DNA of 64,000 bases, taken from Diadema antillarum (Eukaryota). The stretch is taken from assembly GCF_040938485.1 (NCBI RefSeq), contig NW_027271592.1, positions 62,001-126,000 of the forward strand, written 5' to 3'. Positions 22,618 through 23,529 of this stretch are shown in pieces (the first letter of the stretch is position 1; the number at the start of each line of letters is the position of its first letter). A model generated the notes under the pieces. It had not been told where the DNA came from. It was given only the letters and a program-made list of their open reading frames with translations, and searched no databases. The position numbers and the translations under genes are program-made.

Positions 22618-22883
22618 AAACTTCTCGCAGGCCAACGACGTGTGCCATGAGAAGTAGTACGTGCAGTCATCGGACTCCGCGATGAAGACGGGCTCGCCGA
22701 GGGCGTCGCTGCGATGCGGGCAGACGAAATTGATGACGCTGCTCCGCTGGTACTGGTTGTTGTGGCACTCCTTCCCATTGTCGTAGCGCAGGAAGAGAAT
22801 GCTGTCGTCGAAGTAGAGGTTGCGGTTGAAGATGCCAGCGTTGAAGTTGCGCCCCGTGGTTGAGAGTTCTTCTTGACAGGAAC
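22618..22883 (-). CDS. IGF2R: CI-MPR exon, D11 (GSCQEEL...CHNNQYQRSSVINFVC...AESDDCTYYFSWHTSLACEKF), 1->0
   Basis: cccag acceptor, GTAAGT donor. The end matches human D11 FFSWHTPLACEQ. Confidence 0.96.
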
Positions 22884-23400
22884 CTGGGGAAGAAAAAAAT
22901 GAAGTATTTGTTTTATTCCCAACAAAGTCTTTATAAAACAAGAAAACCTCAATTGAGACAAAAAACAAACAAAGCCAAGACATTTGTTTAAAAAATAACA
23001 TTGTAATATAACATTGTAGTAGACATTTCTCCACTATCACATTCAGCACATGAGATAAACTACAGCTATGACCATTCCATTTTCAATAGCGAACATTACA
23101 TCTGTCCTACTGGAAACTTCTTCAGCATTTGAGCAGATGTTAGTGAATTTTTACAGTGACAACATGTTTGCAAATTTTTTGTGAAGACATAAGAAATCAT
23201 TTGTAAAGGCAATTGTACATTCTTGTACAATTGTTCCTTTTCTTGGGACATATTCATTATTTTTTTATGTGCTAAATAAGCACTGTAATTATTGTTATCA
23301 TTATTTGTATTTCTAATACTATAGACCCGAACTTTGCAATGTAATGGAATACCAGTCTACAAAAGGTCAAAGCACCCGACATCTCAGGACGAGTACTGAC

Positions 23401-23529
23401 CGATGTCTTGCCCCTCACAGTTGGTCTGTCCGAGAGGGTTGCAGATGTTCAGGACGTACTTGTGACCATCGCTGCCCATGACGGTGTAACCATCCTCCTT
23501 CTTCAGGGAGGTGAAGTCAAACCTGAAAC
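23401..23529 (-). CDS. IGF2R: CI-MPR exon, D11 (GFRFDFTSL...LNICNPLGQTNCEGQDI), 1->1
   Basis: cag acceptor, GTCAGT donor. Confidence 0.92.

What the first reader, a model, noticed from the sequence alone, without database searches (positions are those of the whole stretch)
22618..23529. Domain 11, the IGF2-binding domain in mammals, carries an intact mannose-6-phosphate lectin site
Seen: one exon encodes GSC-Q (Gln 22873-22875), C-H-NNQYQ-R-SSVINFVC (His 22762-22764, Arg 22744-22746) and IA-E-SDDCT-Y (Glu 22675-22677, Tyr 22657-22659). Spacing matches this gene's D9: Arg at -8 from the FxC Cys and Glu at -6 from Tyr. Established: Q-R-E-Y is the MRH mannose-binding signature of CD-MPR and CI-MPR D3/5/9. 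In the recalled human sequence these D11 positions are F1567, Y1606, D1630 and L1636, and F1567, Y1606 and L1636 are IGF2-pocket residues. Inference: the IGF2 site evolved by repurposing a sugar pocket that is still intact in this animal. I cannot confirm whether this is already published.
Basis: partly seen in the sequence, partly recalled or inferred. Interest (0 to 1): 0.92.

Follow-up and report, generated by a model that had tools for sequence, protein, structure and literature searches.

The report
Sugar-binding signature in sea-urchin IGF2R domain 11
In this sea urchin, and in most invertebrates checked, the receptor domain that binds the growth factor IGF2 in mammals still has the four residues of a mannose / mannose-6-phosphate pocket, so the mammalian IGF2 pocket sits where an old sugar site used to be.

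Summary
The minus strand of the window carries a complete 15-domain CI-MPR/IGF2R gene of a diadematid sea urchin. The nearest database protein is from Diadema setosum.

- **Position.** The exon at 22618-22883 is the C-terminal two thirds of domain 11. It encodes Gln, Arg, Glu and Tyr at the four lectin positions, plus the Cys-His of loop C, at the stated codons.
- **Orthology.** Domain count, colinear alignment and a domain tree all place it with vertebrate D11 (the D11 clade has SH-aLRT 98). It is not a copy of D9.
- **Spread.** The signature is not species-specific. Q-R-E-Y is intact in D11 of 23 of 37 named non-vertebrate, non-tunicate species, from echinoderms and amphioxus to molluscs and arthropods. 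Arg is kept in all 37.
- **Loss.** It is gone in tunicates and in all 130-odd vertebrate sequences: I-H-S-H in fishes, I/V-H-F-x in amphibians, reptiles and birds, F-Y-L-L in therian mammals.
- **Structure.** An AlphaFold model (pLDDT 93.6) is closest to human M6P-binding D9 (rmsd 1.7 Å).

Sugar binding itself, and phosphate specificity, remain untested. The loss preceded IGF2 binding by a long non-lectin stage, so "repurposing" was indirect. I found no prior publication in the papers I could search. On this same window the scan had also noted domain 8's Q-R-E-Y, which I confirmed.

The parts
5971..62148 (-). Complete CI-MPR/IGF2R orthologue: 15 MRH domains (D1 near 62148), transmembrane exon about 8850-9041, last tail exon 5971-6129
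   Evidence: Stop-to-stop ORFs. Colinear tblastn chains with echinoderm, hemichordate, amphioxus and amphibian CI-MPRs. Every domain's signature residues were mapped onto window codons.
27474..27531 (-). First part of D11 (linker and strand 1: DITDSTKPTGDCTTTNPIS-G), at the 3' end of the exon that also ends D10; phase-1 donor CAG|GTAGG
23401..23529 (-). Second D11 exon (strands 2-4 up to the loop before the Cys-Gln), phase 1 at both ends
   Evidence: Pfam CIMR weak hit
22618..22883 (-). Third D11 exon: holds Q, loop C Cys-His, R, E, Y and the domain-end motif WHTSLAC
   Evidence: Pfam PF00878 E=2.3e-12; PDB phmmer
22873..22875 (-). Gln (CAA) of GSCQ. Counterpart of D3 Q348 / D9 Q1292; Phe in mammals (human F1567 as recalled)
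22762..22764 (-). His after the loop-C Cys (ECH), as in D9 (CH...YQR). Conserved in 78% of invertebrate D11; Pro in most vertebrates
22744..22746 (-). Arg (CGG) of YQRSSVINFVC. Invariant in 37/37 named invertebrate D11; His in fishes and birds, Tyr in mammals
22675..22677 (-). Glu (GAG) of IAESDDC. Counterpart of D9 E1354
22657..22659 (-). Tyr (TAC) of CTYYFSW, four residues before the Trp of the domain-end motif. Leu in mammals

Best explanation
[quoted passage not shown] Its domain 11 is a true orthologue of the mammalian IGF2-binding domain. It retains the ancestral carbohydrate-recognition pocket of the MRH fold: Gln on strand 3, Arg at the start of strand 7, Glu and Tyr on strands 8-9, and a loop-C Cys-His as in domain 9.

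Most likely it works as an extra mannose / mannose-6-phosphate-type glycan-binding site beside D3, D5 and D9, and probably D8. That would give the invertebrate receptor five canonical sites for capturing phosphorylated lysosomal enzymes.

This lectin state is ancestral for bilaterian D11. It was lost on the lineage to tunicates and vertebrates, with Q changing to L/I and R to H/Q. Fishes kept a non-lectin I-H-S-H pocket. Only later, in mammals, did the same four positions become the hydrophobic residues (F, Y, L, L) that line the IGF2 pocket.

- **Shown:** the sequence, its orthology, its conservation pattern and the fold.
- **Inferred:** that the pocket binds sugar, and which sugar.
For: **Sequence and codons.**

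**The domain is D11**
- It is the fifth MRH domain before the TM and the eleventh from the N-terminus.
- The colinear chain with the caecilian CI-MPR puts the exon on residues 1576-1655.
- The domain-end motif WHT(S/P)L(A/V)C is shared with vertebrate D11.
- In an ML tree of 136 domains from 9 species, each of the 15 positions forms one clade. D11 has SH-aLRT 98, and the window's D11 lies inside it.

**The signature is ancestral**
- HMM-column read-out gives Q-R-E-Y in D11 of echinoids, asteroids, crinoids, hemichordates, amphioxus, Lineus, oysters, scallops, Mya, Haliotis, Octopus, spider, scorpion, Limulus and centipede. That is 23 of 37 named species, with R in 37/37, Q in 33/37 and Y in 34/37.
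- It is absent in 2 tunicates and about 130 vertebrate sequences.
- The same read-out recovers Q-R-E-Y in D3, D5 and D9 and Q-V-E-Y in D15 of vertebrates. These are the four known CRDs (PMC7481795), which validates the column mapping.

**Conservation.** R109, Q66 and Y138 are as conserved as the structural Cys, Gly and Trp among 36 invertebrate D11s. They are exactly the columns replaced in vertebrates.

**Similarity to a proven lectin domain**
- D11 is 43% identical to the same protein's D9, with Q, H, R, E and Y all aligned.
- The best PDB sequence match of the exon is bovine D9.
- The AlphaFold model has pLDDT 93.6 and pTM 0.87. Its best Foldseek match is human D9-10, 6z30, with TM 0.84 and rmsd 1.7 Å.
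Against: - No binding data exist for any invertebrate D11.
- Q-R-E-Y marks mannose contact, not phosphate contact. Specificity (monoester, GlcNAc-phosphodiester or plain high-mannose) depends on loop residues that I could not evaluate.
- Glu is lost in most gastropods. The whole signature is lost in a tick, a unionid mussel and one nemertean, so the site is dispensable in some lineages.
- In the assembled 15-domain receptor the pocket could be occluded by neighbouring domains.
- Transcript evidence for this exact genome is thin. One 190-nt contig from an RNA-labelled run covers 22753-22889, and no splice joint was seen.
Confidence: 0.7

Rival explanations
1. The pocket is a working lectin site, but not for the M6P monoester. 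It may prefer the GlcNAc-phosphodiester, as mammalian D5 and D15 do, or unphosphorylated high-mannose glycans, as other MRH lectins do.
For: Q-R-E-Y alone does not specify phosphate (general knowledge of MRH lectins, recalled). Loop C of D11 (C-H-N-N-Q-Y-Q-R) is one residue longer than D9's (C-H-T-V-Y-Q-R). Mammalian sites differ in monoester/diester preference (PMC7481795).
Against: D11 is closest in sequence and modelled shape to D9, a high-affinity monoester site, and shares its loop-C His.
Confidence: 0.2
2. The four residues are a conserved relic with a structural or inter-domain role, and D11 binds no glycan in the intact receptor.
For: Several lineages lost one or more of the residues without losing the domain. 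Vertebrate D11 folds well without them (PDB D11 structures match the model at TM 0.76-0.80).
Against: Arg is invariant and Gln and Tyr are 94% conserved across phyla that diverged over 500 My ago, while the neighbouring surface positions vary. Such conservation of polar pocket residues is hard to explain without a ligand. Some arthropods lost the D3 signature but kept D11's (P0011, P0012, P0017, P0019).
Confidence: 0.08
3. The domain is not a true D11 orthologue. It would be a D9-like copy, or a product of gene conversion from D9, that happens to sit at position 11 in echinoderms.
For: The exon's best match in the bovine receptor is D9 (55 bits), ahead of D11 (35 bits).
Against: In the domain tree D11 of invertebrates and vertebrates form one clade (SH-aLRT 98), separate from the D9 clade. 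There are colinear alignments along all 15 domains and a D11-specific end motif, SWHT. The higher D9 score is explained by the shared lectin residues.
Confidence: 0.02

Closest known systems
Domain 9 of mammalian CI-MPR/IGF2R (high-affinity M6P site; PDB 6z30, 6z32)
   Same: MRH fold with eight Cys. Q, R, E, Y and the loop-C His are at aligned positions. Glu-to-Tyr and Arg-to-Cys spacings are the same. D9 is the best structural match to the model (TM 0.84, rmsd 1.7 Å) and the best sequence match of the exon.
   Different: It is a paralogous domain position (9, not 11). The tree separates the two clades. Loop C is one residue shorter in D9. D9's binding is proven experimentally; D11's is not.
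Domain 11 of mammalian IGF2R (IGF2-binding domain; PDB 1gp0, 2v5p, 2l29)
   Same: Orthologous domain: same position, same clade, same end motif, same disulfide pattern, 33-41% identity. The ligand pocket lies at the same end of the barrel.
   Different: Mammals have F, Y, L(D) and L where the sea urchin has Q, R, E and Y. The CD loop that carries the IGF2 contacts is short and hydrophobic in mammals (C-F-G...) but longer and polar here (C-Q-E-E-L-S-T-T-G-R). The FnII insert of D13 that supports IGF2 binding is absent from invertebrate orthologues (Pfam lists).
Domain 11 of fish and bird CI-MPR (no or weak IGF2 binding; chicken 2l21)
   Same: Orthologous domain with the same fold.
   Different: These carry I-H-S-H (fishes) or I-H-F-S (birds) at the four positions. 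That is neither the lectin nor the mammalian set. They are the intermediate state between the form described here and the mammalian one.
CD-MPR and CI-MPR domains 3 and 5 (P-type lectin sites)
   Same: Same four-residue signature and fold. CD-MPR structures match the model at TM 0.61-0.66.
   Different: Lower sequence identity. CD-MPR uses a cation and a different loop for phosphate. D5 lacks the Cys between Glu and Tyr.

Membership tests
MRH (P-type lectin) domain with a carbohydrate-recognition site | MRH beta-barrel fold | tested here: met
   Pfam CIMR PF00878 E=2.3e-12 on the exon. The AlphaFold model has pLDDT 93.6 and 11 strands. Foldseek gives probability 1.0 to CI-MPR domains and CD-MPR.
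MRH (P-type lectin) domain with a carbohydrate-recognition site | Conserved cysteine framework, including the loop-C Cys paired with the Cys between Glu and Tyr | tested here: met
   Eight Cys are invariant in 56 D11 orthologues: C12, C49, C57, C65, C102, C117, C136, C148 of P0244:1502-1652. All are present in the window's translation. Disulfide pairing itself is inferred.
MRH (P-type lectin) domain with a carbohydrate-recognition site | Gln, Arg, Glu, Tyr at the four mannose-contact positions | tested here: met
   Codons 22873-75, 22744-46, 22675-77 and 22657-59. They align to the D9 and D3 residues by phmmer, HMM and BLAST.
MRH (P-type lectin) domain with a carbohydrate-recognition site | Phosphate-contacting residues that give M6P specificity | tested here: inconclusive
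   A His follows the loop-C Cys as in D9. The loop is one residue longer, and no rule predicts specificity from sequence.
MRH (P-type lectin) domain with a carbohydrate-recognition site | Measured, M6P-inhibitable glycan binding | not testable with these tools
   Needs recombinant protein.
MRH (P-type lectin) domain with a carbohydrate-recognition site | The four side chains converge on one cavity in three dimensions | not testable with these tools
   The model's coordinates are not exposed. Only the overall fit to D9 is known (rmsd 1.7 Å over 144 columns), plus the strand placement of the residues.
CI-MPR/IGF2R orthologue, domain 11 | 15 tandem MRH domains, one TM and an acidic tail; the domain is the 11th | tested here: met
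CI-MPR/IGF2R orthologue, domain 11 | Groups with vertebrate D11 in a domain phylogeny | tested here: met
   The D11 clade has SH-aLRT 98, and the window's D11 lies within it.
IGF2-binding domain 11 (mammalian type) | Hydrophobic pocket residues (human F1567, Y1606, L1629, L1636 as recalled) and a short hydrophobic CD loop | tested here: not met
   Q, R, E and Y stand at those columns, and the CD loop is longer and polar.
IGF2-binding domain 11 (mammalian type) | Fibronectin type II insert in D13 supporting D11 | tested here: not met
   PF00040 is absent from the precomputed Pfam lists of Diadema and all other invertebrate and tunicate orthologues. It is present in most vertebrate entries. No extra residues occur between the D13 signature positions in the window.

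The most novel reading that the evidence does not exclude
The ancestral bilaterian CI-MPR was a penta- or hexavalent lectin, with canonical sugar pockets in D3, D5, D8, D9 and D11 plus the Arg-less D15.

Two of these pockets, D8 and D11, were lost before vertebrates arose: D11 on the stem of tunicates plus vertebrates, D8 also in amphioxus. In the bovine cryo-EM structure D8 and D11 are two of the three domains that clasp IGF2; the third is D6. On this reading, mammalian IGF2 capture was built on the vacated sugar pockets of two former lectin domains. Invertebrate receptors would still use those pockets for glycan cargo, possibly for a glycan class that the vertebrate receptor no longer reads.
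Probability: 0.4. Interest if true: 0.78.

Novelty: new variant of a known kind. Interest (0 to 1): 0.62.

Why it matters
Textbook accounts give the CI-MPR four sugar sites (D3, D5, D9, D15) and treat D11 as the IGF2 domain. How a growth-factor site arose in a lysosomal sorting lectin is a long-standing question tied to the evolution of imprinting.

The comparison here gives a concrete, testable path for the four pocket positions:

1. Q-R-E-Y in invertebrates and amphioxus.
2. I-H-S-H in fishes.
3. I-H-F-x in sauropsids.
4. F-Y-L-L in mammals.

It also predicts that invertebrate receptors carry one or two extra glycan-binding domains (D11 and D8). This can be checked with a single recombinant domain and an Arg-to-Ala control. 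It also supplies natural starting points for ancestral-protein experiments on how a hydrophilic sugar pocket becomes a hydrophobic peptide pocket.

Tried and rejected
1. **D9 match by sequence.** The PDB sequence search ranked bovine D9 above D11 for this exon. I considered a D9-derived copy and rejected it on colinearity, the end motif and the domain tree.
2. **Non-orthologous top hits.** The top hits of the 1.8-billion-protein search (P0001, P0003, P0006, P0007 and others) are not orthologues. They are non-colinear multi-MRH proteins made mostly of Q-R-E-Y repeats, and I left them out of the counts.
3. **Sequencing runs.** Only 17-21% of sampled words were held. The runs laid were mostly DNA-like contigs of relatives, about 93% identical and covering introns. 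One RNA-labelled run gave a single 190-nt contig over 22753-22889. No splice joint was seen, so exon structure rests on canonical splice sites and the exact match to the Diadema setosum RefSeq protein.
4. **Literature.** Nine searches and several look-ups found no paper on a lectin signature in invertebrate D11. Williams 2012, Brown 2002, Bochel 2020 and Olson 2015 are not held. What I say of them is from memory, and prior publication cannot be excluded.
5. **Own protein.** The window's own protein was not in the database listings, so the structure was predicted for the Diadema setosum D11. It has 4 conservative differences from the window across the 176 residues compared (D10 end plus D11), none at the pocket.
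6. **HMM gap placement.** The HMM read-out puts mammalian L1629-equivalent, not D1630-equivalent, at the Glu column. This is a gap-placement ambiguity caused by a one-residue insertion in tunicates and vertebrates.

Full report
**What is in the window**

The minus strand carries one large gene that fills almost the whole window. Stop-to-stop reading frames show a regular series of MRH-domain exons, each domain ending in a W-x-T-x-x-A-C motif. After these come a transmembrane exon (about 8850-9041) and a last exon (5971-6129) that ends in an acidic ...DDSDDEILPHV tail.

- Colinear tblastn chains with full-length cation-independent mannose-6-phosphate receptors run from about 62100 to 5971.
- The closest protein is the Diadema setosum RefSeq model P0244. 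It is 172/176 identical over the end of D10 plus D11.
- More distant matches are Strongylocentrotus and Lytechinus (66-69%), starfish (54%), and crinoids, hemichordates and amphioxus (about 47-48%).
- The animal is therefore a diadematid sea urchin.
- All 15 domains of P0244 map onto window codons.

**The observation**

The sequence at 22618-23529 is as described.

- Exon 23401-23529 and exon 22618-22883 have canonical AG/GT borders in phases 1/1 and 1/0. A short first piece of the domain lies at 27474-27531.
- The last exon encodes G-S-C-Q, E-C-H-N-N-Q-Y-Q-R-S-S-V-I-N-F-V-C and I-A-E-S-D-D-C-T-Y-Y-F-S-W-H-T-S-L-A-C.
- The spacing Arg-to-Cys (+8) and Glu-to-Tyr (+6) equals that of this gene's own D9.
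- The exon is a CIMR repeat by Pfam (E=2.3e-12).

**Is it really domain 11?**

A sequence search of solved structures ranks bovine D9 first for this exon (55 bits), then D3 (40) and D11 (35). So orthology needed its own test. Four results agree that this is D11.

- *Count.* It is the eleventh MRH domain from the N-terminus and the fifth before the membrane.
- *Colinearity.* Chains with a caecilian receptor of human-like length place the exon on residues 1576-1655, the D11 interval.
- *Domain labels.* Best-match labelling gives a clean 1-to-15 order in some twenty invertebrate and vertebrate orthologues.
- *Tree.* A maximum-likelihood tree was built from 136 domains of nine species: sea urchin, starfish, hemichordate, amphioxus, oyster, nemertean, shark, coelacanth and pig. 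Each of the 15 positions comes out as one clade. D11 has SH-aLRT 98 and the window's domain lies inside it.

The end motif S-W-H-T-(S/P)-L-(A/V)-C is also shared by invertebrate and vertebrate D11. The higher D9 score simply reflects the shared lectin residues.

**How widespread is the signature?**

I built an MRH profile from starfish and hemichordate domains and read the four columns in every domain of every orthologue. Species names came from the database.

The read-out validates itself. In vertebrates it returns Q-R-E-Y for D3, D5 and D9 and Q-V-E-Y for D15. These are the four recognised carbohydrate-recognition domains (PMC7481795). D15 lacking the Arg is as I recall from Olson 2015.

For D11 the signature is distributed as follows.

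| Group | D11 signature |
|---|---|
| 3 echinoids, 3 asteroids, 2 crinoids, 2 of 3 hemichordates, amphioxus | Q-R-E-Y |
| Nemertean Lineus, oysters, scallops, Mya, Haliotis, Octopus | Q-R-E-Y |
| Spider, scorpion, Limulus, centipede | Q-R-E-Y |
| Saccoglossus, Lingula | Q-R-D-Y, Q-R-D-F |
| Other gastropods (8 of 9; Lymnaea is S-R-K-V) | Q-R-x-Y |
| Tubulanus, a unionid mussel, a tick | lost more |
| Tunicates (Ciona, Phallusia) | L-H-D-H, L-Q-E-Y |
| Sharks, rays, sturgeon, gar, teleosts, coelacanth | I-H-S/T-H |
| Amphibians, reptiles, birds | I/V-H-F-(H/S/W) and variants |
| Echidna | F-Y-V-L |
| Therian mammals | F-Y-L-L |

- Q-R-E-Y is intact in 23 of 37 named non-tunicate invertebrates. 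Arg is kept in 37/37, Gln in 33/37, Tyr in 34/37 and Glu in 23/37.
- In a bat protein the mammalian residues are F1570, Y1609, L1632/D1633 and L1639.
- Among 36 invertebrate D11 sequences, Arg is invariant and Gln and Tyr are 94% conserved. That is as high as the framework Cys, Gly and Trp. These are precisely the columns that change in vertebrates.
- Some arthropods have lost the D3 signature yet keep D11's.
- A filasterean (Capsaspora) protein has 15 of 18 MRH repeats with Q-R-E-Y. This is in keeping with a lectin ancestry for the whole repeat array.

**Structure**

The window's own protein has no single reference. I therefore modelled the Diadema setosum D11. It differs from the window at four positions across the 176 residues compared (D10 end plus D11), none of them in the pocket. 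The input was an alignment of 56 orthologous D11 domains.

- The model has mean pLDDT 93.6 and pTM 0.87.
- Gln lies in a strand (64-68), Arg just before strand 110-116, Glu at the end of strand 127-132 and Tyr in strand 137-143. This is the placement expected for P-type lectins.
- The best Foldseek match is human D9-10 (6z30): TM 0.84, rmsd 1.7 Å over 144 columns.
- Next come opossum and human D11 (TM 0.76-0.80), D5, D8 and D3, and then CD-MPR (TM 0.61-0.66).
- Within the sea-urchin protein, D11 and D9 are 43% identical, with Gln, His, Arg, Glu and Tyr all aligned.
Convergence of the four side chains is inferred from homology, not measured.

**Most likely mechanism**

D11 of this receptor is most likely a working glycan pocket of the mannose / mannose-6-phosphate type, additional to D3, D5 and D9.

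- *Shown:* the residues, their orthologous position, their deep conservation and the D9-like fold.
- *Inferred:* that ligand is bound.
- *Open:* which ligand. Q-R-E-Y contacts the mannose ring, and phosphate recognition depends on loop C. Here loop C reads C-H-N-N-Q-Y-Q-R. It has the His of D9 but is one residue longer.

The mammalian mode of IGF2 binding is not expected here. The CD loop is long and polar, the pocket is hydrophilic, and the FnII insert of D13 is absent from all invertebrate orthologues.

**Evolutionary reading**

Q-R-E-Y in D11 occurs in both protostomes and deuterostomes, including amphioxus, so it is ancestral for bilaterians. It disappeared on the line to tunicates plus vertebrates; whether once or twice is open. 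The fish state, I-H-S-H, is neither a lectin nor a mammalian-type pocket. IGF2 binding has been described only in mammals (PMC12796670, citing Williams 2012).

The idea that the IGF2 pocket is spatially analogous to the CD-MPR sugar site is, as I recall, already in Brown et al. 2002. What I could not find anywhere is the observation that invertebrate D11 still carries the full lectin signature.

**A related point**

D8 of the same gene also has Q-R-E-Y, and so does D8 of many other invertebrates. In the bovine cryo-EM structure IGF2 is held by D6, D8 and D11 (PMC7015683). The two 'extra' lectin-signature domains of invertebrates are thus two of the three IGF2-contact domains of mammals. This is a coincidence worth testing, not a result.

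**Limits**

- No binding experiment has been done.
- No model coordinates were available.
- Transcript evidence for this genome is thin.
- Lamprey, hagfish, cnidarians, sponges, annelids, insects and crustaceans were not sampled.
- Key subscription papers could not be read, so prior publication cannot be ruled out.

**Verdict**

The feature is a known gene and a known kind of site in an unrecognised place: a new variant of a known kind, of solid interest to receptor and imprinting biologists, and directly testable.

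Noticed in passing
window 38088-38162, 38684-38869 (minus strand): Domain 8 of the same gene also carries Q (38846-48), R (38720-22), E and Y (exon ...QTETPECEYIFSWETPAAC). The same holds in other echinoids, starfish, hemichordates, molluscs and Lineus, but not in crinoids, amphioxus or vertebrates. In the bovine structure D8 is one of the three IGF2-contact domains (PMC7015683).
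   Followed up: partly
window 16500-18460 (D13), and Pfam lists of orthologues: No fibronectin type II insert in D13. PF00040 is absent from every invertebrate and tunicate orthologue listed and present in most vertebrate entries, so the insert looks like a vertebrate novelty.
   Followed up: partly
window 5971-6129 (minus strand): The last coding exon ends ...FHDDSDDEILPHV followed by a stop. This is an acidic-cluster/dileucine-like C-terminus resembling the sorting motif at the end of mammalian CI-MPR.
   Followed up: no
window 23993-24523 and 26471-26647: These intron stretches are very high-copy repeats. Summed contig word depth reaches 10^4 to 2.6x10^5 in three DNA-like runs of a related organism, against about 5-70 on the flanking unique sequence. 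Many internal 'joints' there look like repeat variants.
   Followed up: no
P0304 (Capsaspora owczarzaki, 2725 aa) and P0001, P0003, P0006, P0007: These are long non-colinear proteins made of 15-18 MRH repeats, nearly all with Q-R-E-Y. They outrank true orthologues in a single-domain search. The Capsaspora one shows that such arrays predate animals.
   Followed up: no
P0011, P0012, P0017, P0019 (spider, scorpion, centipede, Limulus): These arthropod receptors have lost the Q-R-E-Y signature of D3, the classic N-terminal M6P site, but keep it in D5, D9 and D11.
   Followed up: no
window 12761-13045, 23740-23921, 24969-25108, 50745-50885: Four runs of N lie inside introns of the gene. I left them as they are. 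None touches a D11 exon.
   Followed up: no
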